From positions 1 to 64,000 of the IMG/VR virus record IMGVR_UViG_3300037502_002993: DNA of 64,000 bases. One strand, 5' to 3'. A program made the position numbers and the translations under genes. How positions within the stretch are numbered: position 1 is the first letter of the stretch; each line of letters begins with the position of its first letter. Shown here one piece after another: positions 7,981 through 52,164 of the stretch. The notes under the pieces are model-generated. The model was not told the origin of the DNA. It saw nothing but the letters and a program-made list of their open reading frames with translations, and made no database searches.

Positions 7981-10560
7981 TTAAAGACGTAGGGTTCGGT
8001 GAGACTTGACTTTTCCGTGAAAGTAGGACTTCTTGTTGCGGTGATAGGCCAGGTGGTGAGGGATATCCACACAGACGAAGTAACACATCCGTGGGGTGAC
8101 CTCTGGAAAGTCCTTCAGTGGCCTCAGGCGCCCAAGGATCTGGAGGTTGTCCTTTTTGGAGTTCATGGCATGTAGCAACACCACCTCCTTTAAGTTCCTC
8201 ACATCTACCCCCGTGCCACTGCTCTTCGCTGTACTGACGGTAATGTCTTGCTTTAAGAGTTTGTTATACGGAATGCCCTGGTAGTAGGGTCCGATGGCGA
8301 ACTGCTGCTTGTAGTGAGCCCTGAGGGCCTCTGAGACCTTATCAATGAACGCGACCGTGGCACAGAGGACCAATGCCTTATGCCCCTTCTCAAACTCTCG
8401 AACAAACACCGCATCGAGCACCTTTACAATCTTTCGGATGTAGGCCTCAAACCGTGGCTTGTTCTTGAGCATCTGTGACTCGTAACGCATGTGAGAATAC
8501 ATCCCCCGCATGGGTACGAGAAAGTCCCGTTGATGGATGGGTAGGTCATTATACAGCAGACCAATCACATCTTGATAGACCTTGTGTTCAGGTAGTTGAC
8601 AATGGGTCTCCTCTGGCAGCATGACATTGATCATACCTGTGACGAAATCATTCCCCGTGAACGGCGTAGCTGATAGGTTAATGATTTTACGTACATTGGA
8701 GAATAGATCAATCCGAAAGTAAAGGCCCGGGTCCTCCTGGATCTCGTCATTGATCTGCACACCTATGCCCGCTACCTCATGGAAGGTCGTGGGAAGACAC
8801 CCGTACTCTTCTAAACACGCCTGCTCCCCGTTTTCTTCGAGGTAGTTCAGAAACGCCCGGTAGGTGGCATTACTGATCATAACGCAATCAGCCTTCACCT
8901 TGCCCTCAAGCGCCTGACGGATGAACGCCTTGAGCTTGGGCGATCCATCGATGGTGTAATAACGATGCTCGACCCTTTTCTTTCCAAAGGCGTCATTAAG
9001 GGTCCCTACCCACAGATCAAAGTACTTAGGGGGGATCATAATCGCGAAGCGCATACCGAGTGCAACACATGCTAACATGGTCGTAAGTGAGTTGTGGGTG
9101 ACGATAAAGTCATCAGTCACATAGAGATGATCCGGGTGTGCTATCGTGATACATTGGGTAGGTTCATCCCCAATATACTCAACTGACCGCACTCTAAGTT
9201 TGAGTTCCTCCGAGTACTGGTTGGTCTCTTCTAGACGATCACGTTTACGTGGTAATCGGAAGAGTTTCCGCTGTCGCGGGTGACGGATATTTACCTGGTA
9301 GGCGATGCGCCCGTTACGTTTCTCGCCATTGTGGGTATAAGTAGGGTTGCGTTCACTGATACTGGCAATACCACCGACCGAACGCACTAGGTACTGAACC
9401 TGGGCGGCCAATACTCGGCTGGTACTGCAGAAGGAGACTGTTCCACTGGTTCCTTTACCAGGTTTGTCTACAGTGCCGTCAGTGTCCATCAGGCCCTGGA
9501 GGATCGCATACCGCTGTTCCAGAGAGCCATGTAGGTATTCCTTGGGAATGAACTTCTCCCAACTCCGTCTACCCCACAGTCCGTAGTCTTTTAAGGCTGT
9601 CCGGTATGGGTGCCCTCCATTGGTATATCGGAGCGTGCGGGTTTTATGACCGATGTCATTCCAGTAACTACCTTCAGGCGCCTCAGCTAACACCTCATCG
9701 AAGATGAAATCGTCTAGTTTTGTTATGTTAATAACACCGTTACTAATACCCCCATCACCTAGGATGACTCCTAGTGAGTACGGAGGAATCTTAACATCCG
9801 CAGCCGGACCGTCTTCTGGTTTGCAGAGCGGTATGTACACGCGCGGATTCGGCATCTCACACAACCGCTTGACTTCCAGGGTATCGACTGTTCTCCATCT
9901 ACGGTGCGGAACCGTGTTCACATAAAACACTTTCCAAAGATGTTCAGGACCAGCGTCTGTGTAGCGTCCATCCCAAAAAGTGACTCGATAAAACGGCGTC
10001 ACTCCTTGCGGGTGAACGGCAGTTACTTGTGTGGTGGTGCCGTCCCAAGCAGTGACTTCAGTACCGACCTTCATATCCCCCATGGTGGACCACCCGCCAG
10101 GGATTTTGATCTTAGATGATAATGGCTGTTGCTTACCTCCACCGGTCTGAAGGTAAAGGGCATTGGAGTAACTGTCATTAGACAGGTCACTTACCAGGGG
10201 TATTTGATAATCGCGGGCCTCAATCCCCTTACGGATCTTAAGCTTGAGGGGCTCTGCCTTAGGTACGGCGCGATGGGTGTGGGTGATCACTCGTTCAACG
10301 TAACCGTATTCCTCGATGAAACGTAGGAAGTCAGGTAAGTGGTGTCGATGGAGATAGAGCACCTGACGATCATGGGTGAGGCCAAAGAAACGTTTCTTTA
10401 ATACCATTTCAACGCGACCAAAGCGGTCGGTCTCGGGCTCGACTAGTTTCAGCCCTTTTAGGTACTCACCGATGATCTCCAAGAACTTGGGCTCGTAGCC
10501 CGAAATGCGACACCCGTGGGTGTAGTGCTCAACGTGCAAAGAAAAAGCCATCAGTGTCAT
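7981..10560 (-). CDS. SF2 (UvsW-like) helicase, phiKZ gp75-like, containing an intein
   Basis: RDYQ, Walker A QTGGGK|S split by an intein, DEIQ, SATP, QILGRLR. Confidence 0.9.
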   Translation of the reverse strand: MTLMAFSLHVEHYTHGCRISGYEPKFLEIIGEYLKGLKLVEPETDRFGRVEMVLKKRFFGLTHDRQVLYLHRHHLPDFLRFIEEYGYVERVITHTHRAVPKAEPLKLKIRKGIEARDYQIPLVSDLSNDSYSNALYLQTGGGKQQPLSSKIKIPGGWSTMGDMKVGTEVTAWDGTTTQVTAVHPQGVTPFYRVTFWDGRYTDAGPEHLWKVFYVNTVPHRRWRTVDTLEVKRLCEMPNPRVYIPLCKPEDGPAADVKIPPYSLGVILGDGGISNGVINITKLDDFIFDEVLAEAPEGSYWNDIGHKTRTLRYTNGGHPYRTALKDYGLWGRRSWEKFIPKEYLHGSLEQRYAILQGLMDTDGTVDKPGKGTSGTVSFCSTSRVLAAQVQYLVRSVGGIASISERNPTYTHNGEKRNGRIAYQVNIRHPRQRKLFRLPRKRDRLEETNQYSEELKLRVRSVEYIGDEPTQCITIAHPDHLYVTDDFIVTHNSLTTMLACVALGMRFAIMIPPKYFDLWVGTLNDAFGKKRVEHRYYTIDGSPKLKAFIRQALEGKVKADCVMISNATYRAFLNYLEENGEQACLEEYGCLPTTFHEVAGIGVQINDEIQEDPGLYFRIDLFSNVRKIINLSATPFTGNDFVTGMINVMLPEETHCQLPEHKVYQDVIGLLYNDLPIHQRDFLVPMRGMYSHMRYESQMLKNKPRFEAYIRKIVKVLDAVFVREFEKGHKALVLCATVAFIDKVSEALRAHYKQQFAIGPYYQGIPYNKLLKQDITVSTAKSSGTGVDVRNLKEVVLLHAMNSKKDNLQILGRLRPLKDFPEVTPRMCYFVCVDIPHHLAYHRNKKSYFHGKVKSHRTLRL
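9091..10131 (-). mobile_element. Class 3-type intein with LAGLIDADG endonuclease (347 aa)
   Basis: Starts QQPLSSKI right after Walker A GK and ends VTHN|S; EHLW, TQCITI, and LAGLIDADG motifs LGVILGDGG and LQGLMDTDG. Confidence 0.9.
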
Positions 10561-10594: not shown

Positions 10595-12580
10595 TCATGT
10601 AGTTTTCACCCCTCCCATTAACATGACGTCATAGGGGTGGTCGGGTCGATTCTGGTTGAGGAATAGGCGGGGATGAGTCACGGCTGCTTGTTGCTTCTCC
10701 AAGGCCATCAACCCACCCAGACTGCGGTTCTCCATCAGTTCACTATAGCGTGCAAAGCGTCCTTTGATGGCGGGCTTTGGAAAGGTGTAATCTCCATTGT
10801 CCTTATCCCGGGCCGTCATGGCGAATAACAGCATTTCTGAATGGACCAGGTTCACATAGAGCTTCTCATTGATCAGCTGGTTGAAATGGATCAGCGCCTC
10901 TGTATGATTTCGATATTCAGTCAAGAACCGCTTGCCGTTGATGTTGGCCTGACTGCTCTTATCAAGCTTGATGCCCTTATCGTCACTTTTGGATTGGATA
11001 AAGGTACTGATGCGCTTCATCACCTCATGCATGTGAACGTGTTTCATCGGCATGACCAGGAAGGGTTTCTCCGGATCAAAGTCCGACATGTCGATCACAA
11101 TGTTACCACTGTCATCATGGGTCCAGCGTTTCTTCACCAGGTACTGCAGCATGGCATGGGAGAATGACGCCTTCCGATTGTGCAGCGAAACCGTTAGCAT
11201 ATCACGAATGGGTTCGTCGCAGTCTGCAATGCTAAAGAGGATCTGGGTGATCTGACTGGCACTGCGGATGGGATAGAGATTGATCTTTCTCACCATCAGG
11301 ATATCGGCAAGGTTCTTTGCCTCCGTGTGGTGAATGGTCATGATCAGCTTACGTCCCATCCACTTCTTCTTTAAGAAGATGACCTCATCCATTCCCCGAT
11401 ACTGCAGGTACTTACTTTCCACCTGACCCAGTTGGAACTTGTCCACCCCTCCAATGCTGTCTTGGTGCTTGGTCGACAGTACCGCTGAGGTGATCTTATC
11501 TCCGGTGTCTACCGCACTGACCTGACCGATATTGGTGTCTTTAGGGATACTAAAGGCAATCCGTCCGTAACAGGTAGAGCAGACCCCCTGGGGATCGGGA
11601 TGGGTACAGCCCAACACTGAGCGCAGCTGAATGGTCTGTCCGATTAGGTGGGTGTGGTCTTTGGTGATCCAATCCAACACCACACTGCCGTCCTCCTGCT
11701 TGGCGTAGTAATATTTCCCCACCAAGGTTTTGAACATCTCCCTCATCACCGGGAATTGGATGCTGTAGGAGGTACCACAGTCACCATGATGGAGGCGCTG
11801 GATATAGGCGGCCACCATCTGCAATTTCCGGTTGAAGTATTCGGTATCGCGAATCAACTCCTTGTTAAATGCCAAGGCCTTAGACCCACTGCGGGATTCA
11901 ATCAGATTCCCATAAAGCCCCGGTACGCCTTCGAGCAGTCCTCGGGTAATGGGCACACGGAAGATATCTGAGTTCACATCAGTTCGATCCCCTAAAGGAC
12001 CAAAGCACTGCAGGGCCTGCCCCATCTTGATGGTCCCGCTGCGCAGGGATTCTGCAATCGGGTTTCCAATCAAGTCATCTGAGGTCAGCAGGGTCTTTTT
12101 GATAACCTCATAGGTCTTGGCAATGCTTGCGGTGTTGGGCTGTACTGCCGCATTGGCCTTCTTGATGTCGGGGTGCTCCATAACCTGAAGGGCATCAATC
12201 AGCGACATGGTCGTGACGTAGCGCCCGAGGTTGGTGATGATGGCATTGTACAGGCGGTTATTGGTTTTAAATACCTGATGGGCCAGTGTCTCCGTATCGG
12301 CGGGCTCCCCCAACTGTTGGTGGATGTGCCAGGCGACTCGGTTCATCCGATCCAGAATGCTCCCTCCACTCAACCGCCCTTTCCCTAGGTGGAAGTCTTT
12401 AAGCAGAGACACCTCGGGATAGAAGGTGAGGGGGTACCAGAAGTACACGGAGATGATGGTGGCGCGGGTGTGGGTTTCGATCTCTCCGTCGTCAAAGACG
12501 ACAACATGACGCTCCTCGGGAAGGGCCCAAAGGGCCGCTTCCTCCATTGCCAGTAGGTCTCTTGCGGAGTACCGATTCAT
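10595..12580 (-). CDS. nvRNAP beta'-like C-terminal subunit (phiKZ gp74-like)
   Basis: Bridge-helix-like SRSGSKAL..TEYFNRKLQ, DCGT, Zn site RSVLGC..GVCSTCYG, LSTKH. Confidence 0.88.
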   Translation of the reverse strand: MNRYSARDLLAMEEAALWALPEERHVVVFDDGEIETHTRATIISVYFWYPLTFYPEVSLLKDFHLGKGRLSGGSILDRMNRVAWHIHQQLGEPADTETLAHQVFKTNNRLYNAIITNLGRYVTTMSLIDALQVMEHPDIKKANAAVQPNTASIAKTYEVIKKTLLTSDDLIGNPIAESLRSGTIKMGQALQCFGPLGDRTDVNSDIFRVPITRGLLEGVPGLYGNLIESRSGSKALAFNKELIRDTEYFNRKLQMVAAYIQRLHHGDCGTSYSIQFPVMREMFKTLVGKYYYAKQEDGSVVLDWITKDHTHLIGQTIQLRSVLGCTHPDPQGVCSTCYGRIAFSIPKDTNIGQVSAVDTGDKITSAVLSTKHQDSIGGVDKFQLGQVESKYLQYRGMDEVIFLKKKWMGRKLIMTIHHTEAKNLADILMVRKINLYPIRSASQITQILFSIADCDEPIRDMLTVSLHNRKASFSHAMLQYLVKKRWTHDDSGNIVIDMSDFDPEKPFLVMPMKHVHMHEVMKRISTFIQSKSDDKGIKLDKSSQANINGKRFLTEYRNHTEALIHFNQLINEKLYVNLVHSEMLLFAMTARDKDNGDYTFPKPAIKGRFARYSELMENRSLGGLMALEKQQAAVTHPRLFLNQNRPDHPYDVMLMGGVKTT

Positions 12581-13506
12581 TAGGGCGAATCCTGTTCTGG
12601 TTGGTAGTGAAACTTAATGCCGCGGCAGTTAAAGAAGTGCTGTGTGATCGCCACGGGCCGACTCCCGCCATAGGGGAACCGCTCCCGGTCAACAACGCGA
12701 TCAATGTTGGTGGGTTTTGGTGCCTCCAGGATATTCTGGGTGACATGCCGATGCACATCAGGGCTATTGCTCTGGTCAAGAAACTCCATGGTCACCTCTG
12801 GGGTGACATAGGCGTTATACGAGCGGGTTTCTGATTCCCCGAGGCCTCTCACGGACTGCTGCCGCCCTGGTGAGGTCGACCGATCATACTGGTTCAGTTT
12901 GGCGGGAATGCCAAAGTGTTGGAGCTTTACTGAGGCCACCCCACTCCAGTCCTCCGCGGTCTTCTCCAGCAGTAAGAACTGCATATTGCCAATCAACACC
13001 GGGTGTTCAGTGGTGACCATCTCCCCTCGCATGTCCCGATAGGTCACAGGACCGTAATGGGGCTTGAAGGGAGAGTTCTCTAATGCCAGTGCGGTCTGCA
13101 GGTAGTTATTGGGACTGTCTGACGGGATGTGTAGGAAGATCCCATCGCGCAGGATACATCTTACGTGTTCTGCGGGGTTGGGGTGTGCTTTGATGATGGG
13201 AACCATCAAGGGCGCTATGATACTGTAGAACTCAAGCAGGGTGTCGAATGTTCGGGTCACCCACCCACTGTCCTGCAGGGCGTTATTGAGTTCAACGTCG
13301 GTGGGTTTCATGTGAGAAGCAATCCCCACCTCGTTTCTCAGGCGTTGAGTGAGGTCATAGGCCGCTGCGTTAAAGTATTGGTCATAGAACCTTCCCATGT
13401 TGGTTCGGTTAAACGTCGATACGCCGTAGATCGCAACATCGGCTACCTTCCCCGTGCCATCCTTGGGCATGGCTTCATCGGGGTAAATACGACAGATGAC
13501 TCCTTT
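12580..13506 (-). CDS. nvRNAP beta-like C-terminal subunit, exon 2 (phiKZ gp73-like)
   Basis: KGVICRIYPDEAMP..DV, RTNMG, RGLGESE beta-subunit motifs; begins right after the intron-terminal G. Confidence 0.88.
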   Translation of the reverse strand, partial: KGVICRIYPDEAMPKDGTGKVADVAIYGVSTFNRTNMGRFYDQYFNAAAYDLTQRLRNEVGIASHMKPTDVELNNALQDSGWVTRTFDTLLEFYSIIAPLMVPIIKAHPNPAEHVRCILRDGIFLHIPSDSPNNYLQTALALENSPFKPHYGPVTYRDMRGEMVTTEHPVLIGNMQFLLLEKTAEDWSGVASVKLQHFGIPAKLNQYDRSTSPGRQQSVRGLGESETRSYNAYVTPEVTMEFLDQSNSPDVHRHVTQNILEAPKPTNIDRVVDRERFPYGGSRPVAITQHFFNCRGIKFHYQPEQDSP

Positions 13507-13916
13507 CGAGATCTTCAAGTGGGGTCGTTACGCCCACCCCGCGGTGTGTCTCCCTCACGGGAGTCATCCGCTGCTCCAGGCTTTCCCTGGATGCCGAGAC
13601 TATCTCTTGATCCTCTCCCAGATGGAGTAGGACCCTCCCCATTTCCCCGACCGATAACTTGCCGGGTACAGGCTGGTAAGACCTTAGTCGTTGAGCACAT
13701 CCCATATCCATCCGCAGGGAATGGACTTAGGGACTTCGCTGCGGATTACCCATTTCACTCCAGGGACTGGAGATCATCCTTACGCTTTTTACCGCACCCA
13801 AGTAGTTAGCTTGGACCCCGTGGGGTGTCTGACGACACCGGTCACTCTTTCGAGCACGAGTTGGTACGTAAGGCTTTAGTGGCTTCCCGCGATTAGAGGA
13901 GGTTCACTCAGGACTC

Positions 13917-14736
13917 TCATCCTGAGCGGGCCGTAGGTACGTAATAATGCAATCGGTATCCTTCCACAACGCGACATCTAGCGATTGCTTTGATGACGTC
14001 GTTTTTACTTCCAAGGGTATTGGAAAAGTGTTCAGCTGCTTTAGTGATATTGGTGAAGAACAACTCACCGCCTTCATTGTCAACAGCAATCACACCACGG
14101 GCACGGTTTTTGGGGTTATCTCTAAAGATGGCCAAATCCCGCTCGTTGAACTCCGGCCAGGGAGTGTCATCGCCCTCTTGACGAAACAGGTAGCCGTAGT
14201 AAGGCCTGTCCCATTTTTTCTTGATCTGATTAAGAAGTCCTCCAGGATACTCTAACCTTAAGTCTTCATTGACACTCCCCTTCTTTTAAGAAGGGGATTC
14301 TTGCTTCATTGAACTGACTTACCTTCGGTAAGGAAGGCAGTGGTCACTTTCTCCACAAGCGTTTAGTGAGTCCGTATGCCCTACGGCCTCTGCTAAAGTC
14401 ACACTCAATGGGCCAGCGATAGCGATACCCAATGTTTGATGGGTGGAGGTTATCCCAATTCCCATCGATGTGAAACGGTTCGACCTTCCACCAATGGTGA
14501 TAGCCTAGCCTTAACTTCCCAAACGCCGCCAGTACCAACAGAGCGACGGGGATTTCACTTATCACCCCTCCAGTGTTAACGCTAACTACCCACCCTAGCA
14601 TCTCATCAAAGCTAGGGGTTATTTCCACCCCGTTATGGAAAACCTGGCCGCTTTCCATAACCCTGACTTCCCCGGTAGTCAATGCCGGATCAATCAGTCC
14701 AAACCCTTGTTCGTTAGAAAGGTACTTTTCAAACAT
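13917..14736 (-). pseudogene. Intron-encoded HNH-type homing endonuclease, disrupted by a TnpB right-end insert
   Basis: N-terminal part 14409..14736 has HIDGNWDNLHPSNI; C-terminal part 13917..14267 is open for 116 codons with GYLF..PWP and a NUMOD1-like FTNITKAAEHF. Confidence 0.75.
14269..14408 (-). mobile_element. Stand-alone IS200/IS605 right end / TnpB omegaRNA, copy 1
   Basis: Near-identical to 50072..50212; ends GGGGAGTGTCAA on the minus strand; no tnpB and no left end. Confidence 0.88.
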
Positions 14737-14801
14737 TTCAACCTCCTAAACTCCTGCAATAGGAGGAAGAATATCGTTATGCATTAGTTACGGGTCGCTC
14801 C

Positions 14802-15992
14802 ACCATGCAAAAAATCCGTGAGCTTATAGCCCCCATCGACCATCATTGGCCAATCATAGGTGATCTCCACGCGCCACTCATCCAGGGTATCGAGCTTATG
14901 CATACGCGTAAGCTTGCGTTCATGGAGCGGTGTGGGGAGATAGATCAGGGCCTCTACGATCAGCTGTTGAAACTCAGGGGTGATACGCGGTGAGCCGCGA
15001 CGATCCCTCTTGAGCTGTTCATAGACCTTAAGGATGCGGCGATAGTACTCGCACTGGGCTTCGTAATACTTACGGGCTTGGCGATCCATTCCCGTGGGTG
15101 TTGGACTTGGGTTAACGCGCTCGTCATGGTAGACCTTCACATCCACAATGCGCGCGCCGGCCCGCGCCCACAGCACGCGATCAAAATCGTGCTGAATCTC
15201 ACGCAGTGCCCTTGGCGTCATATCGGCAATCCCAAGAACGGGATCGCGATCTCGGGTCGCCATGACAACCCCATCAGGGCCGATGATATCGCCGATATCG
15301 GGAAACGCCTTGTAGGTGTTAGCATCACCATGGACATTGAGCGGAAATGACTTCTTACCGAAGCTTCCGACAATGGTCTGATAGCGGTGAGCGGTGAGTT
15401 TCTTCAGAAACCCCTCGCGGACCAGAAACCCATCCTCGATGGTACTGGGCAGTGAGAAGAAACAGACCTGGGCTTCGGTACCAATACCGTAGCTCCCATC
15501 ATCCATCTTGGCAATGCTGTCAGCCAGTGACTCCCCTTTCTCGAAGTTGGCACCAGGGGCAAGTCGCTCCAAAGCACGGGAGTTGGGCCTTAGCGGGTAA
15601 CCAAACTCCGTGTGTAATGCCTCGTATTTCTTAAGGCGCAAGATCCCGACGGTTTTATAAGGGTCATCGAAATCCTCATAAACGATCAGGGTTTCGGGGT
15701 TTTCACGAATGCTATCCTCCCCTACCCCTGGCGTATAGCGACGGATCACATCCCTTACCGTGGCGTTACAAGGAAAGGTTGCACCAAAGGTCTCTCTGCC
15801 GTACTTGATCTCCTGACCAGTTTGGATTTTTCTTGGCTCCACACCTTCCACCACCAGGGCTTGCCCTAGCTGGGTCGCGCCCATGGCCTTACGCGCAGCG
15901 GTGTTATTGCGAAAGAAGGGGTCGAGTGCTCCCGTACCCAGTAGTGTGGCTTTGAGTTCACGGGCTTCTTCAGTGGGATTAGGGTTGATCAT
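14802..15992 (-). CDS. nvRNAP beta-like subunit, exon 1 (phiKZ gp71-like)
   Basis: R..M..QLGQA, TIEDG and terminal GYKLTDFLHG motifs. Confidence 0.88.
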
Positions 15993-26992: not shown

Positions 26993-27436
26993 CAAATGTC
27001 TTCAGTGTGGTTCGTTAGGCCACACCCGCCACCTCCCCGCCTCACGGCGGTAAGGCGCTGCTCTGGGCGTTACCCAGACTGTTGAGATCATCTCTTATTC
27101 CACTTCCTGTGGAATCCTCCCGTTTTGACCCCACTTGGGGCCTACGCTACTCATCACTGTGATCCATTCCTTGGCAGTGCTTTCGCTGACCGTTGAGCCC
27201 ACTCCTTATCAATTAAGACTTAGGAGCTTCGCTGCGTGATTGGACAATCTCCACCGTTATTACCGACTGGCGTGTTTGTAACGCCAGGAGCGGCTAGTAG
27301 CCGCCCGTACCCAGTTAATTAGACTGGCCGCTAGTTTGTTTCCAGAACTAGTTTGGTAGATGGAGCTCTAAGCCCGTCCCCGCAATTAGAGAGGTTGTTT
27401 AGCTGTATGTTACCATACAGGGTGACATCACTGTTT
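26993..27436 (-). ncRNA. Group I intron 3 of the beta' gene (444 nt, no ORF)
   Basis: Exon GGUGAU pairs with internal guide GUCACC with a U-G at the splice site; AATTGCGGGGA and AATCACGCAGC core elements; ends GAAGACATTTG. Confidence 0.88.
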
Positions 27437-27448
27437 ATCACCATCAAA
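27437..27448 (-). CDS. 12-nt micro-exon 3 encoding FDGD
   Basis: TTT GAT GGT GAT lies between an intron-terminal G and the next 5' splice site. Confidence 0.88.
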
Positions 27449-27929
27449 CAAATATCTTCGACTGGAGTCGTTAATTCCAGCCCGTCTTCCCTGGGACTAC
27501 TGCACCAGGAGACAGCTTCAGGATTTCCCTGAATGATTGAGACCATATCTTCCACTGTGTCTAAACACAGCAGCCTCCCGTTTCGATTTAAAGGACTTAC
27601 GTCTAGTGCCATTCCACACTAGCGGCCTACCCAAACACTTGGCTCTACTCTACTCACTTTAATCTCCGTAGAGACCAGCGCACTTTACAGCGCTGTCACT
27701 CCGCTTGCTTTGAGCAAGCCGCAGCTTTCGATGGTCGTTGAACACATGCCGTAGTTCCTAGTGTAGAAACCTTAGGCACTTCGTTGCGCTGATTCTGCCT
27801 GTTCAACACGTTTTTACCAAGCCACCCACTTCCATTACTGGGGGTGGTATTGTAGTGGGTTTCCCCCTACAAGTGGTAGTGTTGACATACAGCAAGTTCC
27901 CGCAGTTAGAGAGGTAAGGACCTTGATCG
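27449..27929 (-). ncRNA. Group I intron 2 of the beta' gene (481 nt)
   Basis: Exon GGAU pairs with GUCC; AACTGCGGGAA and AAGATATGGTC core elements; ends GAAGATATTTG. Confidence 0.88.
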
Positions 27930-27935
27930 ATCCGC
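27930..27935 (-). CDS. 6-nt micro-exon 2 encoding AD
   Basis: GCG GAT directly after the intron end GAAGGCACCG. Confidence 0.85.
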
Positions 27936-28402
27936 CGGTGCCTTCAGTAGGGGGCGTTACTCCCTACCCGCTACCCTTCTGTCTCTCGACAGTAAGGCGC
28001 TGCTCCAGGTTTTCCCTGGATGCCGAGACTATATCTTCACCCGCCAGCTTTAGACTGGGTAGGGTGTCTTCCGTTTCCCCGCCCGATCACTTGGCAGGTA
28101 CAGGGGCCCGAATCCCTTAGTCGTTGGGCACATCCCATATCCCTGTAAAAGGAACTTAGGGACTTCGCTGCGTGATTCCCCATTTTGCCTTATCTAGCGC
28201 ATCCTCGTCTCTTTTACTGTACCGCTGTGGTTAGCAGCGCCCCTGTGGGGTGTCTGACGACACCGGTCACTCTTTCGAGCACAGGTTAGTGTACGAGGCT
28301 TTAGTGGGTTCCCGTCAATTAGGAAGAACACCGCCCAGAACTTTCATCCTGGGGGAACATTAGGAAAGTTTCTCCAATCGAGGTATTTTAACTTTCCTGT
28401 CT
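27936..28402 (-). ncRNA. Group I intron 1 of the beta' gene (467 nt)
   Basis: AATTGACGGGAA, AATCACGCAGC, GACTAAG and AAGATATAGTC core elements; starts after CCC AAT; its P1 pairing is not obvious by eye. Confidence 0.85.
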
Positions 28403-34019: not shown

Positions 34020-35173
34020 TTGACACTCCCCCTCCTAAAGTAGGGGGATTCTTGCTTCATTGAACTGACTTACCTTCGGTGAGGAAGGCAGAGGCCCTGT
34101 TCTCCACAAGCGTTTAGTGAGTCCGTATGTCCTACGGCCTCTGCTGACTCATAGCTCAAGCTACATCTAAGCGGTGTTCTTGGATAAACACCGCCGTCAG
34201 TGTTTGTCTTAAGTGACTCGCTGGTGGGAGTTGTTCCAATGCCATGTTCCGCAGGTTGATGGCGGCATTGTGATCTCGATCATGCTGTGTTCCGCAACTA
34301 GGGCACTCCCACCAGCGTTCGTTCAGTTTAAGTTTGTTGGACCCTTCTAGTCGATGGTCACACGCACTGCACGTCTGTGTACTCGGAAAGAATCTCTCTG
34401 CAATGACGACCTTGCAGTGCTGCGACTCATCGGCCTTGTAGACCAACATGGACAGGAACTGACGCCATCCACAATCAGCAATGTGTTTGGCTAGACGTCG
34501 GTTCCTGACCATGCCTTCAATGTTGAGGTTCTCAATAGCAATGGTCATGCATTGGTCTACAAGACCTCTGGAGAGCTTGTGCTGAAAGTCCATCCGACAC
34601 CGCTTGGTTTTTGCGTATATCTTGGCGACTTTCAGCCGTTGTTTTCTGTAGTTGGCACTACCCCTCACCATTCTTGCTAACTTCCGTTGTGCTCGTGCCA
34701 ACCTGACCGCATGTTTCTGTTGGTATTTGGGATTGTCATACTCCTTCCCTTCTGAGTCTACCGCAAAGGTCTTAATCCCTAAGTCCAATCCCAAATGAGA
34801 CTCCCCATTCGTGAGTCTTGGTTCACATTCACAAATGAAACAGGCGTAATATTCCCCACTAGACTCACGAATAATACTGACAGAACTGGGTGGGGTGGGG
34901 AGCACCCCACCCCACTTTTCGTTCTTGTAACTCCATTTAGTTTTGATAGGGGAATGCATTGCCTTAGCAATGCAGAATTCCCCACTCTCCAAATCTAAGG
35001 AGAATGCAGCGTTCGTCAGTCGGATGGACTGACGACTTTGTTTCTTTTTAAACTTGGGAAATCCAATCTTCCCTTTTCCTTTAAAGAAAGATTGGAAAGT
35101 TGTCCCGAGGTCCCTAAGAGACTGCTGCAAGATGACTGAGGAGACCTCATAGAGAAACCCATGCTCTTTCTTT
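34020..35173 (-). mobile_element. 5'-truncated tnpB element, copy 2 (right end/omegaRNA at 34020..34155)
   Basis: Colinear with 50072..51232; homology stops at 35173; no left end. Confidence 0.88.
34156..35173 (-). pseudogene. tnpB: TnpB lacking about 68 N-terminal residues
   Basis: RuvC GLDLG, IENL, DRDHNAA and the Zn finger are retained; in-frame TAA just upstream and no native start. Confidence 0.85.
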
Positions 35174-44246: not shown

Positions 44247-44954
44247 CTAAGACATTACGTCTTCCACATCCCACAGTAAATGTTGAAGAAATCCGGCACC
44301 GGCCTCTTCGGTTCTATTCCACCAACGGAAGATCCAACTAACATACGCTTCACTGGATTCCTCGTTTGGGTGGGATTCCAGGGTACCGATCTCAAATACC
44401 ATGCCGTGCGGGAGCCATGCGTCGACTAACAACTCCCAGGTCTCACTATTACCTTCCTCAACTACCACGCACAGGTATCCCGGTTCGTCGTCAACGTCTT
44501 GGTGGATATGTCCACTACATGACCAGACCGTGGCGATTCCGGGAAGTTGGTTCAGTGCCTGCACTAACTCACGAATGGGCTCATCCAGACAGCTAATGTC
44601 AAGTGCCAGGGCATGGGTCTTAAAGAAAGCAAAACGTTCCGTCGGTAAGTATTGACACTCCCCTTCTTTTAAGAAGGGGATTCTTGCTTCATTGAACTGA
44701 CTTACCTTCGGTAAGGAAGGCAGTGGTCACTTTCTCCACAAGCGTTTAGTGAGTCCGTATGCCCTACGGCCTCTGCAGCCAAATGACCTCACCAGGAGGT
44801 CACGCTGTTTCGCATTCGGATAGATCCGAAAGCGAAACGCTTTCGTAACCATGATGACCTCCTGGGAAAGTGGATTGGTGTGTATGTTAGTATTTAGTGG
44901 TCTTATATCCCCGCCATAAATGACGGGGTTTTACGACCACAACTGATAAGGCAT
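44247..44954 (-). pseudogene. 137-aa gene with D.PI..N..T..SCSGH motif (Tyw3-like N-terminus), interrupted after codon 3
   Basis: Removing 44652..44945 gives ATG CCT TAT|TAC TTA CCG (MPYYLPTERF..LDEPIRELVQALNQLPGIATVWSCSGH). Confidence 0.8.
44652..44945 (-). mobile_element. 294-bp internally deleted (MITE-like) tnpB element, copy 3
   Basis: Left end and first about 25 tnpB codons joined to the right end/omegaRNA; inserted 3' of TTAT. Confidence 0.92.
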
Positions 44955-50071: not shown

Positions 50072-51528
50072 TTGACACTCCCCTTCTTAAAAGAAGGGGA
50101 TTCTTGCTTCACAGAACTGACTTACCTTCGGTAAGGAAGGCAGAGGCCACTTTCTCCACAAGCGTTTAGTGAGTCCGTATGCCCTACGGCCTCTGCTAAA
50201 GTCACTACTCAAGCTACATCTAAGCGGTGTTCCTGTAAGAACACCGCAGTCAGTGTGTTCCTCAAATGGCTCGCTGGTGGGAGTAGCTCCAATCCCATCT
50301 TCTTAAGATTGATAGCGGCATTGTGATCACGATCATGTTGAGCGCTACAACTGGGACACTCCCACCAACGCTCGCTGAGCTTGAGTTTGTTCTTACCATG
50401 TAGTCGATGGCCACACGCACTGCAAGTCTGTGTACTCGGGAAGAATCTCTCTGCGATAATCACCTTGCAGTGCTGCGACTCATCGGCCTTGTAGATCAGT
50501 TGGGACAGGAACTGCCGCCATCCACAATCACTGATGTGTTTAGCGAGTCTCCTGTTCCTGACCATGCCTTCAATATTCAAGTTCTCAATAGCTATTGTGG
50601 AGCATTGGTCTACAAGGTTACGAGAGAGCTTATGCTGAAAGTCTAACCGACACCGCTTGGTTTTTGCGTATATTTTAGCGACTTTCAGCTGTTGCTTTCT
50701 GTAGTTACTGGAACCTTGCTTTTTCCTAGCAAGAGAGCGTTGCGCCCTCGCCAGTCTCCTGGCGTATTGCCCTTGGTATTTGGGATTGGCATATTCCCTT
50801 CCTTCTGAGTCCACGGCAAAGGTCTTAATCCCCAAATCCAATCCCAAATGGGCGTCTCCATTCGTGAGCCGGGGTTCACACTCGCAAATGAAACACGCGT
50901 AGTACTCTCCATTGGACTCACGAATGATACTGACAGAACTGGGTGGGGTGGGGAGGACCCCACCCCACTTCTCATGCTTCTGTTTGTAACTCCATTTAGT
51001 TTTGATAGGGGAATGCATGGCTTTAGCCATGCGGAATTCTCCACTCTCCAAATCTAAGGAGAATGCAGAGTTCGTCAGCCGGATGGACTGACGACTGAGT
51101 CGTTTTTTAAACTTGGGAAATCCAACTTTCCCTTTCCCTTTGAAAAAGGATTGGAAAGCAGTCCCGAGGTCCCTAAGGGACTGTTGTAAGATGACTGAGG
51201 AGACCTCATAGAGAAACCCATGCTCTTTCTTTAACTCGGGGAGTCTCACCACGAGTGCATTCGCACTCAGTTTGGGTTTCTCTAGTGTTGGGTTTGTCTG
51301 GTAAGCCTCATACTCCTCCCGTACCCTGTTGAGTACTTGATTCCAGACAAACCGTTTACAGCCAAATGACCTCGCCAGGAGGTCACGTTGTATGGCATTC
51401 GGATAGAGCCGAAAGCGAAACGCTTTCGTAACCATGATGACCTCCTGGGAAAGTGGATTGGTGTATATGTTAGTATTTAGTGGTCTTATATCCCCGCCAT
51501 AAATGACGGGGTTTTACGACCACAACTG
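50072..51528 (-). mobile_element. Complete tnpB-only IS200/IS605 (IS1341-group) element, copy 4
   Basis: Minus strand: TTAT|CAGTTGTGG left end with CCCCGTC-ATTTAT-GGCGGGG hairpin, tnpB, omegaRNA, right-end hairpin and TCAA; no target duplication. Confidence 0.93.
50209..51435 (-). CDS. tnpB: TnpB RNA-guided endonuclease
   Basis: KAFRFRLYPN, FGC.RFVWN, GFPKFKK, RuvC D (GLDLG), E (IENL) and D (DRD.NAA), CSAC..CPSC. Confidence 0.95.
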   Translation of the reverse strand: MVTKAFRFRLYPNAIQRDLLARSFGCKRFVWNQVLNRVREEYEAYQTNPTLEKPKLSANALVVRLPELKKEHGFLYEVSSVILQQSLRDLGTAFQSFFKGKGKVGFPKFKKRLSRQSIRLTNSAFSLDLESGEFRMAKAMHSPIKTKWSYKQKHEKWGGVLPTPPSSVSIIRESNGEYYACFICECEPRLTNGDAHLGLDLGIKTFAVDSEGREYANPKYQGQYARRLARAQRSLARKKQGSSNYRKQQLKVAKIYAKTKRCRLDFQHKLSRNLVDQCSTIAIENLNIEGMVRNRRLAKHISDCGWRQFLSQLIYKADESQHCKVIIAERFFPSTQTCSACGHRLHGKNKLKLSERWWECPSCSAQHDRDHNAAINLKKMGLELLPPASHLRNTLTAVFLQEHRLDVA

Positions 51529-52164
51529 ATAACGACGATCTGACGAATGAAAACTGACATAGAAGCCAGCAAGGGGTTTAACTGCTCTACAACGAGAGCA
51601 GCGCTTGAGTTGGTGGTCAGGAACGTCGTTGAGTCCCTCCTCAAGTACCAGTCTTAAGGTCTGGCGTTTGCGAAACTCCAACACCGTCTCATCCACCACC
51701 CCATCGCGAGCTTGGCTTCGTTCTCTAACAGAGCGACTGACACAGGCTTTACAACGTGAACCACGCCCTGTCTTCTTGCGTCGGTCAATACTGAAATCTG
51801 TTATCGGTTTTTCTTCGCTGCATAACCGGCACTTCCTCTCGCCCTCCATCTGCGGTGGAAAGGTAGTCCTGGCCGCATCCTTACAAACGCGGCATGTTAG
51901 GTTGAGGCCGTACTTGTTGCGACCGACCAGATCAAAATCCGTCACCAGACGAACCTGATCGCACTTCCTACAGGCAAACAGCAAGGCATCATCAGGGAAT
52001 GTCGCCGTTACTCGCAGACGCAACTCCTGTTGAAGTTCCAGTAGACGATAGCGTTTACTTGGCACCACCTCTCGCCCGTCGGCGTATCGCATAGCCAGGT
52101 CCTTTATGCCATAGTGGGGTGCCGTTAGGCACCCCTTTAACAGGAGGGGGTTAACCCCCATCAA
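51514..52164 (-). CDS. Triple Zn-finger (CxxC) repeat protein, C-terminus cut by the IS
   Basis: CRKC/CRVC, CRLC/CKAC, CSRC; IS removal restores DRRY|PHCSECDEK..KA* (50009..50071); start uncertain. Confidence 0.75.
   Translation of the reverse strand: MMGVNPLLLKGCLTAPHYGIKDLAMRYADGREVVPSKRYRLLELQQELRLRVTATFPDDALLFACRKCDQVRLVTDFDLVGRNKYGLNLTCRVCKDAARTTFPPQMEGERKCRLCSEEKPITDFSIDRRKKTGRGSRCKACVSRSVRERSQARDGVVDETVLEFRKRQTLRLVLEEGLNDVPDHQLKRCSRCRAVKPLAGFYVSFHSSDRRYQLWS

What the first reader, a model, noticed from the sequence alone, without database searches (positions are those of the whole stretch)
13507..14801. Nested elements: TnpB guide module inside a homing endonuclease inside a group I intron of RNAP beta
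Seen: the intron HNH ORF breaks at about 14408, where a short ACTCAA microhomology with the tnpB stop region marks the junction. It resumes after TCAA at 14268. Only the omegaRNA module of the IS is left, in the same sense as the intron. Inference: the excised intron would carry scaffold plus guide, and the guide matches the intact endonuclease allele. A protein homing nuclease has thus been replaced by a potential RNA guide against endonuclease-positive relatives. This differs from described IStrons, where the IS ends coincide with the intron ends.
Basis: partly seen in the sequence, partly recalled or inferred. Interest (0 to 1): 0.72.

Follow-up and report, generated by a model that had tools for sequence, protein, structure and literature searches.

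The report
Dead intron endonuclease with TnpB-guide remnant
In a giant phage's RNA-polymerase gene, a self-splicing intron carries a homing-endonuclease gene that lost its catalytic core when a transposon inserted and was then mostly deleted, leaving only the transposon's ~130-base guide-RNA module; the four-level nesting is real, but whether the leftover guide still works is unproven.

Summary
The window is part of a 220.6-kb phiKZ-like jumbo phage. Its non-virion RNA polymerase beta gene (minus strand) has a 1,295-nt group I intron at 14801..13507. The intron's P1 loop holds an HNH homing-endonuclease gene (HEG). Intact homologs are about 445 aa. Here only residues 1-113 and the last 116 remain.

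Between the two pieces lie 129 nt (14269-14397). They are the 3' end of an IS605-family tnpB element, from just past the tnpB stop to the right end ...GAGTGTCAA. The genome has eight copies: three full, with intact TnpB. The left junction is an 11-of-12 microhomology.

In public metagenomes, one ~97% identical relative has 668 nt in place of the 129 nt, which is the intact HEG. Four have the intron without the HEG.

Most likely history: a full IS inserted into the HEG, then a ~2-kb deletion removed the HEG core, the left end and tnpB.

The remnant equals a complete omegaRNA core (ISDra2 needs 116 nt). It is in the intron's sense, and its guide matches the intact allele by construction. The TTAT before the target could not be read, and no RNA data exist. 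So the nesting is confirmed, and a working guide remains possible (about 0.2).

The parts
14802..15992 (-). Exon 1 of the non-virion RNA polymerase beta subunit (phiKZ gp71-73 homolog). Coding ends ...FLHG at U14802. The ORF as listed reads 5 codons into the intron, to the stop at 14784.
   Evidence: phmmer to PDB 7ogp_C gives E 2.5e-114, ending at chain residue 393. Exon 2 starts at that same residue.
13507..14801 (-). Whole group I intron, 1,295 nt. The 5' splice site follows U14802 and the 3' splice site follows G13507.
   Evidence: The same intron at the same site is found in L009, L011-L013 and the phiKZ-like HUST_1.
14780..14804 (-). P1 5' strand: GGU|G at the base and CGUAA(C)UAAUGCA (14792-14780) in the extended helix.
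   Evidence: MFE fold of the HEG-less relative L069 has z -4.66. L009, L012 and L013 pair equivalently with different sequences; this was worked out by hand.
14398..14736 (-). HEG N-terminal fragment, residues 1-113 (M...RWPIECD), with RBS GGAGG upstream. The listed 130-aa ORF reads on into the IS remnant, to the stop at 14344.
   Evidence: Aligns to residues 1-114 of 28 intact ~445-aa homologs. Weak hit to phrog_959 HNH endonuclease. No Pfam HNH_3 hit.
14398..14408 (-). Deletion junction. An 11-of-12 microhomology between the HEG (TTGAGT-GTGAC, coding IECD) and the IS (TTGAGTAGTGAC, spanning the tnpB stop).
   Evidence: Three-way comparison of ours, L075 and IS50k. The X2 contig matches the window down to 14398.
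14269..14397 (-). IS605-family right-end / omegaRNA core remnant, 129 nt, ending GAGTGTCAA.
   Evidence: 8 genomic copies. 100% identical over 126 nt to the MITE copy at 44651-44776 and 95% to the module behind the full tnpB at 50 kb. Conserved fold with 7 compensatory pairs. Single-sequence z -2.93.
14249..14268 (-). Guide-equivalent flank, TGAAGACTTAAGGTTAGAGT. These are the first 20 nt of the resumed HEG frame.
   Evidence: Position directly 3' of the right end, as in all copies. No second match in the genome with 3 or fewer mismatches plus a TAM. Present in the X2 intact allele.
13917..14268 (-). HEG C-terminal fragment, 116 codons (EDLRLEYPGG...GYRLHYYVPTARSG) plus stop. It is the DNA-binding tail, out of frame with the N fragment.
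   Evidence: Aligns to residues ~333-448 of intact homologs at 58-65% identity.
13907..13951 (-). P1 3' strand (UGCAUUAUUACG 13951-13940, GCC 13931-13929) and the P2 hairpin (13926-13907). They overlap the last HEG codons.
13574..13948 (-). Catalytic core of the group I intron.
   Evidence: RF00028, 73.8 bits, E 7e-17.
12580..13506 (-). Exon 2 of RNAP beta (KGVICRIYPDEAMP...).
   Evidence: PDB 7ogp_C residues 393-699, E 1.4e-93.
50072..51536 (-). Full-length IS of the same family: TTAT, left end, tnpB (51435..50209, 408 aa) and right end. It is a possible trans source of TnpB.
   Evidence: Pfam OrfB_IS605, Cas12f1-like_TNB and HTH_OrfB_IS605. ISDra2 TnpB E 2e-61. RuvC D/E/D and CxxC..CxxC intact.
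44652..44953 (-). Protein-less derivative (MITE/PATE-like): TTAT, left end, 77 nt of tnpB and a 125-nt right-end module.
34020..35173 (-). 5'-truncated IS copy. Its tnpB is 324 aa and lacks about the first 100 residues.

Best explanation
This is a layered pile of selfish elements caught in decay.

Shown: the essential nvRNAP beta gene carries a group I intron whose long P1 hairpin loop houses an I-HmuI-like HNH homing-endonuclease gene. The arrangement is shared by a clade of jumbo phages.

Inferred history: a tnpB-only IS605-family element inserted in sense orientation after codon ~336 of the HEG. That family has three intact and five partial copies in this TnpA-less genome. A roughly 2-kb deletion then joined HEG codon 113 to the tnpB stop region across an 11-of-12 microhomology. 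It removed the HEG catalytic core, the target motif, the left end and all of tnpB.

What is left: 129 nt, which is the complete omegaRNA core, plus its native flank (the 'guide').

Consequences, all inferred:
- The endonuclease is dead. It is a 130-aa chimeric stub with no HNH_3 or NUMOD domain.
- The intron should still splice, because the ribozyme core and P1 are intact and the host gene is essential.
- The remnant is transcribed inside the intron RNA.

I judge the remnant to be primarily debris of element turnover. It is the kind of debris that can still be loaded by TnpB made in trans. I put a TnpB-loadable RNA at about 0.4, and real cleavage or homing on HEG-positive alleles at about 0.2. 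The confidence given here (0.7) is for the anatomy, the insertion-then-deletion history and the 'mainly debris' reading taken together; the anatomy alone I put at about 0.95.
For: - Intron and exon borders.
- HEG family and the missing ~222 residues. Pfam HNH_3 and NUMOD hits fall only in the missing part.
- IS family, copy list, left and right ends, TTAT at 4 left ends and at the g81k junction.
- Chimeric junction.
- Natural alleles. Intact HEG: 668 nt replace 14269-14397, and 668+1 = 223 codons, in frame (X2). HEG-less intron: 772 nt absent in X4, X5 and X6 and in L069.
- The allele is real. The Logan assembly of the source run crosses the left junction (L072 starts at 14373). The junction 31-mers occur in two samples of one study.
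- TnpB paralogs are intact, and no TnpA is present.
- omegaRNA core size in ISDra2: PMC10097598.
- Conserved, compensated fold of the module.
Against: - No genome with the full IS at this site was seen, so insertion-then-deletion is inferred from the exact right-end/flank junction and the microhomology alone.
- The 4 nt that preceded the flank in the intact allele are unknown. Family conservation (Gly in 23 of 28 homologs) does not predict TTAT there.
- In-genome protein-less or truncated derivatives have 5' breakpoints bunched in a 33-nt stretch right at the omegaRNA 5' boundary: q1573, ~1597, 1595 and 1605 of a 1,460-nt element. One more lies at the same place in run X2. That looks like selection for intact omegaRNA modules rather than random decay.
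- Splicing and RNA processing are untested.
Confidence: 0.7

Rival explanations
1. Working solo guide. The intron RNA releases a ~130-150-nt omegaRNA whose guide is TGAAGACTTAAGGTTAG. TnpB from one of the three intact copies loads it. In mixed infections it cuts the intact HEG allele of relatives at TAM+target. Repair from this genome then spreads the HEG-dead, guide-bearing intron. This would be non-restorative transposon homing without a transposase.
For: - The full omegaRNA core is retained, at 100% / 95% identity to sister modules.
- TnpB paralogs are intact and diverged by 14-17% without frameshifts.
- The guide matches a natural intact allele.
- The self copy is protected, because TCAA rather than TTAT precedes it.
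- Canonical IS605 insertion implies the target motif stood directly before the flank.
- Deletion endpoints cluster at the omegaRNA 5' edge.
- PATEs with omegaRNAs acted on in trans are recognised (bioRxiv 10.1101/2023.03.14.532601).
- TnpA-independent spread through a plasmid population is noted in PMC13565253.
- Intron nucleases act as weapons in jumbo-phage RNAP genes.
Against: - The TAM is unread, and Gly conservation argues mildly against TTAT.
- There are no RNA data.
- The remnant is buried in an ~800-nt P1 loop of a structured intron.
- The exact junction words were found only in one study's samples, so there is no sign of spread.
- HEG-less alleles, which are common (4 of 5 related samples), lack the target.
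- If this is a nucleus-forming phage, TnpB must enter the phage nucleus (my own knowledge; not tested).
Confidence: 0.2
2. One-step acquisition. The 129-nt module was copied into an already degenerate HEG from another copy, for example by template switching or break repair primed on the TGA/GTGAC microhomologies. No full IS was ever at this site.
For: - The remnant is 100% identical to the 44.7-kb copy over 126 nt.
- Short homologies sit at both edges: GTGAC on the left, and TGA shared by CAA|TGA and ATTGA.
- No full-IS allele was seen.
Against: - The right edge is exactly the transposon's own cleavage end, TCAA|, as in all 8 copies. That is expected from transposition, not from random break repair.
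- The remnant extends 8-15 nt further 5' than the 44.7-kb copy, so that copy cannot be the donor.
Confidence: 0.1
3. Assembly artefact. A repeat-induced chimera joined unrelated contig ends through the multi-copy module.
For: - The module is an 8-copy repeat, and Logan contigs break inside it.
Against: - The left junction is crossed by an independent assembly of the source run.
- Junction 31-mers are present in two samples.
- Both flanks are the two ends of one HEG, in correct order and orientation, inside one intron.
Confidence: 0.02

Closest known systems
Group I intron of the phiKZ nvRNAP beta gene (gp71-73; spliced protein in PDB 7ogp chain C)
   Same: Same gene and same insertion site...HGG|KGVIC in phiKZ...LHG|KGVIC here. 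Same Rfam family.
   Different: The phiKZ-like HUST_1 copy is ~340 nt with no ORF. Here and in L009 and L011-L013 the P1 loop holds a ~445-aa HNH gene, and in this genome that gene is gutted and carries IS debris.
PhiPA3 gp210, an intron-encoded I-HmuI-like HNH endonuclease in a jumbo-phage RNAP beta gene (Birkholz et al., bioRxiv 10.1101/2023.09.30.560319; Science 2024)
   Same: A mobile group I intron with an HNH nuclease in an RNAP subunit gene of a phiKZ-like phage. It was shown there to act in competition between co-infecting phages.
   Different: It sits in a different RNAP gene (virion RNAP) and its nuclease is active. Here the catalytic domain is deleted.
IStrons (CdISt1-type; PMC4227781, PMC10690162)
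   Same: A group I intron physically combined with IS605/IS607-family tnpB sequences, with omegaRNA and intron on one transcript.
   Different: In IStrons the intron forms the 5' part of the transposon and the omegaRNA overlaps the 3' splice site, so the element moves as one unit. Here the IS piece lies inside a HEG in the P1 loop, ~530 nt from the 5' and ~760 nt from the 3' splice site. It has no left end and no tnpB.
PATE/MITE-like protein-less IS200/IS605 derivatives that encode omegaRNAs (Meers et al., bioRxiv 10.1101/2023.03.14.532601)
   Same: A protein-less derivative that keeps the omegaRNA and would need TnpB in trans. True PATE-like copies exist in this genome, at 44.7 kb and 95.8 kb.
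   Different: The 14-kb copy has no left end, so TnpA cannot move it. Only homology-directed copying could.
ISDra2 TnpB-omegaRNA (PDB 8exa/8h1j; PMC10097598)
   Same: TnpB of equal length (408 aa), E 2e-61, with the catalytic triad conserved. The omegaRNA is built from the right end. A possible pseudoknot (GAC at -104 with GUC at -5..-3) sits at nearly the ISDra2 position.
   Different: There is no detectable sequence similarity of the RNA to any Rfam family. The TAM is inferred as TTAT rather than TTGAT. Activity is untested.
Homing-endonuclease life cycle: invasion, fixation, decay, loss (summarised in PMC13565253)
   Same: Intact, decayed and HEG-less versions of one intron coexist in related phages.
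   Different: Here the decay step was caused by a second mobile element, which left a potentially active RNA part behind.

Membership tests
Group I intron (Rfam RF00028) | Covariance-model score above the curated gathering threshold | tested here: met
   73.8 bits against a threshold of 50, covering model positions 1-253.
Group I intron (Rfam RF00028) | 5' splice site after a U paired with G in P1, and 3' splice site after G | tested here: met
   GGU(14802)/GCC sits at the base of P1 in the fold of the HEG-less relative. G13507 precedes AAA GGA GTC = KGV. The exon junction matches the spliced phiKZ protein.
Group I intron (Rfam RF00028) | Self-splicing demonstrated | not testable with these tools
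I-HmuI-like HNH homing endonuclease (Pfam HNH_3 + NUMOD) | HNH_3 catalytic motif present | tested here: not met
   No Pfam hit in either fragment. In intact homologs HNH_3 lies at residues ~194-229, inside the missing part.
I-HmuI-like HNH homing endonuclease (Pfam HNH_3 + NUMOD) | Homology of the remaining parts to the family, and location inside a self-splicing intron | tested here: met
   The N fragment is 33-48% and the C fragment 42-65% identical to 28 full-length members, aligned end to end. The same intron context is seen in L009 and L011-L013.
IS200/IS605 tnpB element | tnpB ORF with RuvC D-E-D and zinc finger | tested here: not met
   Absent at the 14-kb locus. Present in the copies at 50 kb, 92 kb and 190 kb.
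IS200/IS605 tnpB element | Left end with its hairpin next to a target motif, and right end with its hairpin and cleavage site | tested here: not met
   The right end is present and ends in TCAA|. No left end and no TTAT on the 5' side.
IS200/IS605 tnpB element | Y1 transposase TnpA available | tested here: not met
   No PF01797 match in the 220.6-kb genome, while the control genomes ring. A host copy cannot be excluded.
TnpB omegaRNA | Complete scaffold (about 116 nt in ISDra2) directly 5' of a guide, with a conserved structure | tested here: met
   129 nt retained. The alignment of 8 copies gives 35 pairs, 7 with compensatory changes. The size criterion comes from PMC10097598.
TnpB omegaRNA | TAM immediately 5' of the guide-matching target in the allele to be cut | not testable with these tools
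   The intact allele is seen only as '668 letters between'. No retrievable close ortholog exists.
TnpB omegaRNA | Expression, processing and binding to TnpB | not testable with these tools
IStron | Intron 5' end coincides with the transposon left end, and the omegaRNA/right end overlaps the 3' splice site | tested here: not met
   The remnant is at 14269-14397, inside the HEG in the P1 loop. The splice sites are at 14802/14801 and 13507/13506.
PATE/MITE derivative of IS200/IS605 | Both transposon ends retained, no ORF | tested here: not met
   Only the right end is present at 14 kb. The feature is met by the copy at 44652-44953.

The most novel reading that the evidence does not exclude
In this TnpA-less jumbo-phage lineage, TnpB and a set of protein-less omegaRNA modules work as a distributed homing and competition system. 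Deletions are selected to strip tnpB but stop exactly at the 5' edge of the omegaRNA. Each orphan guide, supplied with TnpB in trans, cuts the uninterrupted allele in co-infecting relatives and is copied in by repair. At 14 kb this has converted a protein-guided homing endonuclease gene inside an intron into an RNA-guided one aimed at endonuclease-positive introns. That would be one selfish element overwriting another with its own drive.
Probability: 0.2. Interest if true: 0.8.

Novelty: new variant of a known kind. Interest (0 to 1): 0.55.

Why it matters
All parts are known kinds: a phiKZ-type RNAP intron, an I-HmuI-like HEG, an IS605 TnpB element, and protein-less omegaRNA derivatives. What has not been described is their nesting, together with the natural three-allele series (intact, gutted with an omegaRNA, and HEG-less).

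This gives a concrete, sequence-defined case for two open questions:
- Can TnpB guides drive homing between co-infecting phages without a transposase?
- Are orphan omegaRNAs functional units under selection?

If the guide is inert, the locus is still a clean example of how one mobile element ends the life cycle of another inside an essential phage gene.

Tried and rejected
Searches for relatives of the module or the HEG pieces:
- GenBank phages gave nothing, by blastn on the module or tblastn on either HEG piece.
- The exact 19-nt guide is absent from IMG/VR.
- A 15-nt right-end pattern gave 34 IMG/VR hits. None was related when checked by BLAST, so they are chance matches.

Searches for the IS in cellular genomes, aimed at a host and more TAM evidence:
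- The best TnpB relative in 185,579 species genomes is only 39% identical.

Attempts to obtain the DNA of a close intact HEG allele:
- JGI metagenome scan: best 64%, plus the HEG-less relative.
- Protein search with the C fragment: best 69%.
- 90%-cluster look-ups: only a 546-nt ENA contig covering the N part.
- Neighbour-gene look-ups: only the source sample and HEG-less relatives.

Other attempts:
- Protein-RNA complex prediction of TnpB with the remnant was not folded by the tool.
- Rfam in permissive mode has no family matching the module.

Readings considered and rejected:
- A 5' splice site after AAC (14787), which would add GATRN to the protein. Rejected because of the phiKZ protein length, the U-G rule and the 1-nt indel in L069.
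- A clean in-frame insertion of 139 nt into an otherwise complete ~226-aa HEG, which was my first reading. Rejected once the 445-aa homologs were found.
- A free-standing HEG between two split RNAP genes. Rejected by the P1 pairing across the ORF and by the HEG-less allele.
Full report
CONTEXT. The window is the first 64 kb of a 220,598-bp IMG/VR virus record with terminal repeats. Nearly all genes are on the minus strand. The ORFs at 15992..14784 and 13518..12580 match the two halves of one protein, the beta subunit gp71-73 of the phiKZ non-virion RNA polymerase. The PDB 7ogp chain C hits have E 2.5e-114 and 1.4e-93. Both alignments meet at chain residue 393. This is therefore one gene interrupted by about 1.3 kb.

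THE INTRON. Rfam's group I intron model scores 73.8 bits (threshold 50) at 13948..13574 on the minus strand. The same gene is interrupted at the same place in several relatives:
- a phiKZ-like Pseudomonas phage, with a ~340-nt intron and no ORF;
- the metagenomic relatives L009, L011, L012 and L013, whose introns carry a ~445-aa ORF.

The 3' splice site follows G13507, and exon 2 starts AAA GGA GTC = KGV. I place the 5' splice site after U14802 (...FLHG|KGVIC...) for three reasons:
- it gives the same protein length as the spliced phiKZ protein (...FHGG|KGVIC...);
- GGU pairs with GCC at the foot of a long P1 hairpin, just 5' of P2, in the minimum-energy fold of a 97-98% identical HEG-less relative (L069, z -4.66);
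- that relative differs from the window by a 1-nt indel a few bases downstream, which a coding exon would not tolerate.

The endonuclease ORF lies in the loop of P1. The 5' strand CGUAA(C)UAAUGCA (14792-14780) pairs with UGCAUUAUUACG (13951-13940), which is also the codons LHYY at the end of the ORF. L009, L012 and L013 have different sequences at both places that pair in the same way; I worked this out by hand.

THE ENDONUCLEASE GENE IS GUTTED, NOT JUST SPLIT. The ORF starting at 14736 (RBS GGAGG) and the frame ending at 13917 are the two ends of one protein family. A search with the L009 ORF found about 30 full-length members of 439-479 aa.
- The window's first 110-113 residues align to their residues 1-114.
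- Its last 116 residues align to their residues ~333-448.
- The missing ~222 residues hold the only Pfam-recognisable domains, HNH_3 at ~194-229 and NUMOD.
- The retained N part has a second, weaker HNH-like motif (HIDGNWDNLHPSN). Its phrog_959 hit has E 0.0013.

As it stands, the locus encodes a 130-aa stub that runs into foreign sequence.

THE FOREIGN SEQUENCE IS THE 3' MODULE OF A TnpB TRANSPOSON. The stretch 14269-14408 recurs seven more times in the genome, always in the same orientation and always ending GAGTGTCAA. Mapping a full copy against the genome gives:
- three full elements at 50 kb, 92 kb and 190 kb;
- one 5'-truncated element at 34 kb;
- two protein-less derivatives that keep a left end, at 44.7 kb and 95.8 kb;
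- two right-end-only copies, at 81 kb and 14 kb;
- two ~45-nt left-end/right-end hybrid hairpins.

The ORFs are TnpB. They hit Pfam OrfB_IS605, Cas12f1-like_TNB and HTH_OrfB_IS605, and ISDra2 TnpB at E 2e-61. The three full paralogs are 83-86% identical, with the RuvC D/E/D and zinc-finger cysteines intact. Four left ends are preceded by TTAT. By analogy with IS608 and ISDra2 I take TTAT as the target-adjacent motif. The genome has no Y1 transposase.

The module has a conserved fold of 35 pairs, 7 of them with compensatory changes. For ISDra2, a 116-nt scaffold plus a 16-nt guide is the functional omegaRNA, and everything further 5' is dispensable (PMC10097598). The 129 nt kept here cover that core. 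GAC at -104 can pair with GUC at -5..-3, close to the ISDra2 pseudoknot position (my inference).

THE JUNCTIONS. On the right, the element ends at its own cleavage site, and the HEG frame resumes at once: TCAA|T GAA GAC TTA..., position 14268. On the left, the HEG reads CCC ATT GAG TGT GAC (PIECD, as in the family consensus PIEC[DE]). The IS reads GC TTGAGTAGTGAC TTTAGCAG, where TGA is the tnpB stop. The window reads ATTGAGTGTGACTTTAGCAG. This is the signature of a deletion across a short homology.

NATURAL ALLELES. Laying Logan contigs of four other metagenomes on 12600-15900 was the most informative step.
- In run X2 (sludge, 2024), one 3,523-nt contig matches 15900-14398 and 14268-13665 at ~97%. 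It has 668 other letters in place of 14269-14397. Since 668+1 nt = 223 codons, the ORF is restored to ~452 aa. This is the intact allele. It also fixes the remnant's limits independently.
- In X4, X5 and X6, contigs skip 13967-14738 (772 nt, with a 4-nt ambiguity). The JGI contig L069 shows the same at sequence level. This is the intron without the HEG, keeping the last ~16 HEG codons that form the P1 3' strand.
- A more distant ENA relative (L075, 81% nt) reads PIECD|NLPGFYYIPFF and then hits a stop at codon 165. That is another decayed copy.

The remnant-bearing allele was found only in two samples of the source study. An independent assembly of the source run crosses its left junction, so it is not an assembly artefact. 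Depth over the module is about 8-fold (X2) and 5-fold (X4) that of the flanks. Loose ends read into tnpB and into the 44.7-kb-type junction, so the relatives carry the same IS family.

MOST LIKELY HISTORY AND MECHANISM. A full tnpB element transposed into the HEG after codon ~336, in sense orientation. That step is inferred: the right junction is the element's exact end, which transposition gives and random repair does not. A ~2-kb deletion between the two TTGAGT..GTGAC sites then removed 223 HEG codons, the target motif, the left end and tnpB. The nuclease is dead. The ribozyme core and P1 are intact, and the gene is essential, so splicing very probably continues (inferred).

The remnant is transcribed within the intron and is a complete omegaRNA core in front of its original flank. 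Intact TnpB is made elsewhere in the genome. The self copy is safe, because TCAA rather than TTAT precedes it. PMC13565253 calls this non-restorative transposon homing. Meers et al. note that PATEs encode omegaRNAs used in trans. Intron nucleases in jumbo-phage RNAP genes do act in phage-phage competition.

WHAT KEEPS THIS FROM BEING SHOWN.
- The four bases before the target in the intact allele could not be read. The tool reported only '668 letters between', and every route to a close ortholog failed.
- Canonical insertion argues that the motif was there. However, the homologous residue is Gly in 23 of 28 family members, which as GGT would give NNGG. One distant homolog has GG-TTAT-GAC, three bases out of register, which proves nothing.
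- There are no RNA data.
- The allele shows no sign of spread beyond one study.
- Most related samples have the HEG-less intron, which lacks the target.

AN OBSERVATION THAT FAVOURS FUNCTION. Four independently truncated copies in this genome begin at positions 1573, 1595, ~1597 and 1605 of the 1,460-nt element. A fifth, in run X2, begins at about the same place (loose end at 14390). These positions fall within ~33 nt around the tnpB stop, so each copy keeps 125-156 nt and no less. Only one truncation, at 34 kb, lies elsewhere. Random deletion endpoints would not bunch like this; my rough estimate is of the order of 1e-6. Either orphan omegaRNAs are selected, or the spot is a recombination hot spot.

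VERDICT. The nesting and the guide-to-intact-allele match are real. 'Replacement of a protein nuclease by an RNA guide' remains a hypothesis that I put at about 0.2. Compared with known systems this is not an IStron and, at this locus, not a PATE. It is a new configuration of known parts.

Noticed in passing
window 44652-44953, 34020-35173, 14269-14408; genome 81215-81370, 95816-95950: The 5' breakpoints of four independently truncated IS copies, plus one in run X2, bunch within ~33 nt around the tnpB stop. Each copy keeps 125-156 nt of the omegaRNA end. Only the 34-kb copy breaks elsewhere. This suggests selection for orphan omegaRNA modules, or a recombination hot spot.
   Followed up: partly
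genome 96095-96144 and 180818-180866 (outside the window): Two ~45-nt mini-elements: TTAT, then the first ~25 nt of the left end fused to the last ~20 nt of the right end through a hybrid hairpin, ending GAGTGTCAA. They may be footprints or minimal substrates of the transposase.
   Followed up: no
genome 81215-81377 (outside the window): A right-end-only copy whose 5' junction reads TTGTTAT|ACCGCTTAG. TTAT is retained exactly where the left end should begin, so the deletion started precisely at the transposon's left cleavage site.
   Followed up: no
window 7981-10560 (-): An 859-aa helicase-like ORF contains an intein-like insert, with Cys/...THN boundaries visible in the translation. Pfam LAGLIDADG_3 is recorded for the identical product on the source contigs.
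   Followed up: no
window 28003-28379 (-), also 27517-28003 and 27063-27446; genome 165870-166310, 167734-168108, 212895-213348: At least four group I introns score above Rfam's threshold in this genome. Three weaker matches include two directly adjacent to the 28-kb intron.
   Followed up: no
L011:4213-4875: In one relative, the same RNAP intron region carries a LAGLIDADG ORF (220 aa) downstream of the intact HNH gene. That is two homing-endonuclease genes between the same exons.
   Followed up: no
run X2 record 4 and run X4 joint 13857->14269: In relatives, contigs join the IS right end to sequence resembling this intron. X2 has the right end, an 18-nt flank-like stretch, then a 32-nt match near 13756. 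X4 has the right end next to ~13857. These may be IS copies in paralogous introns or in diverged copies of this locus.
   Followed up: no
window 14455-14520 (-), HEG residues ~73-94: The HEG family has a strongly conserved N-terminal HNH-like motif (EPFHIDGxxxNLHPSNIGYRY), in addition to the Pfam-recognised HNH_3 domain in the middle. This suggests a tandem of two HNH-like modules.
   Followed up: partly
L075 (ENA contig, 546 nt): A more distant relative's copy of the same HEG ends at a stop after 164 residues. This is an independent decay of the gene.
   Followed up: no
window 34156-35130 (-): A tnpB copy lacks about the first 100 residues but has the RuvC and zinc-finger motifs intact and its own omegaRNA module. 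It is probably inactive, and a TldR-like regulator role was not examined.
   Followed up: no
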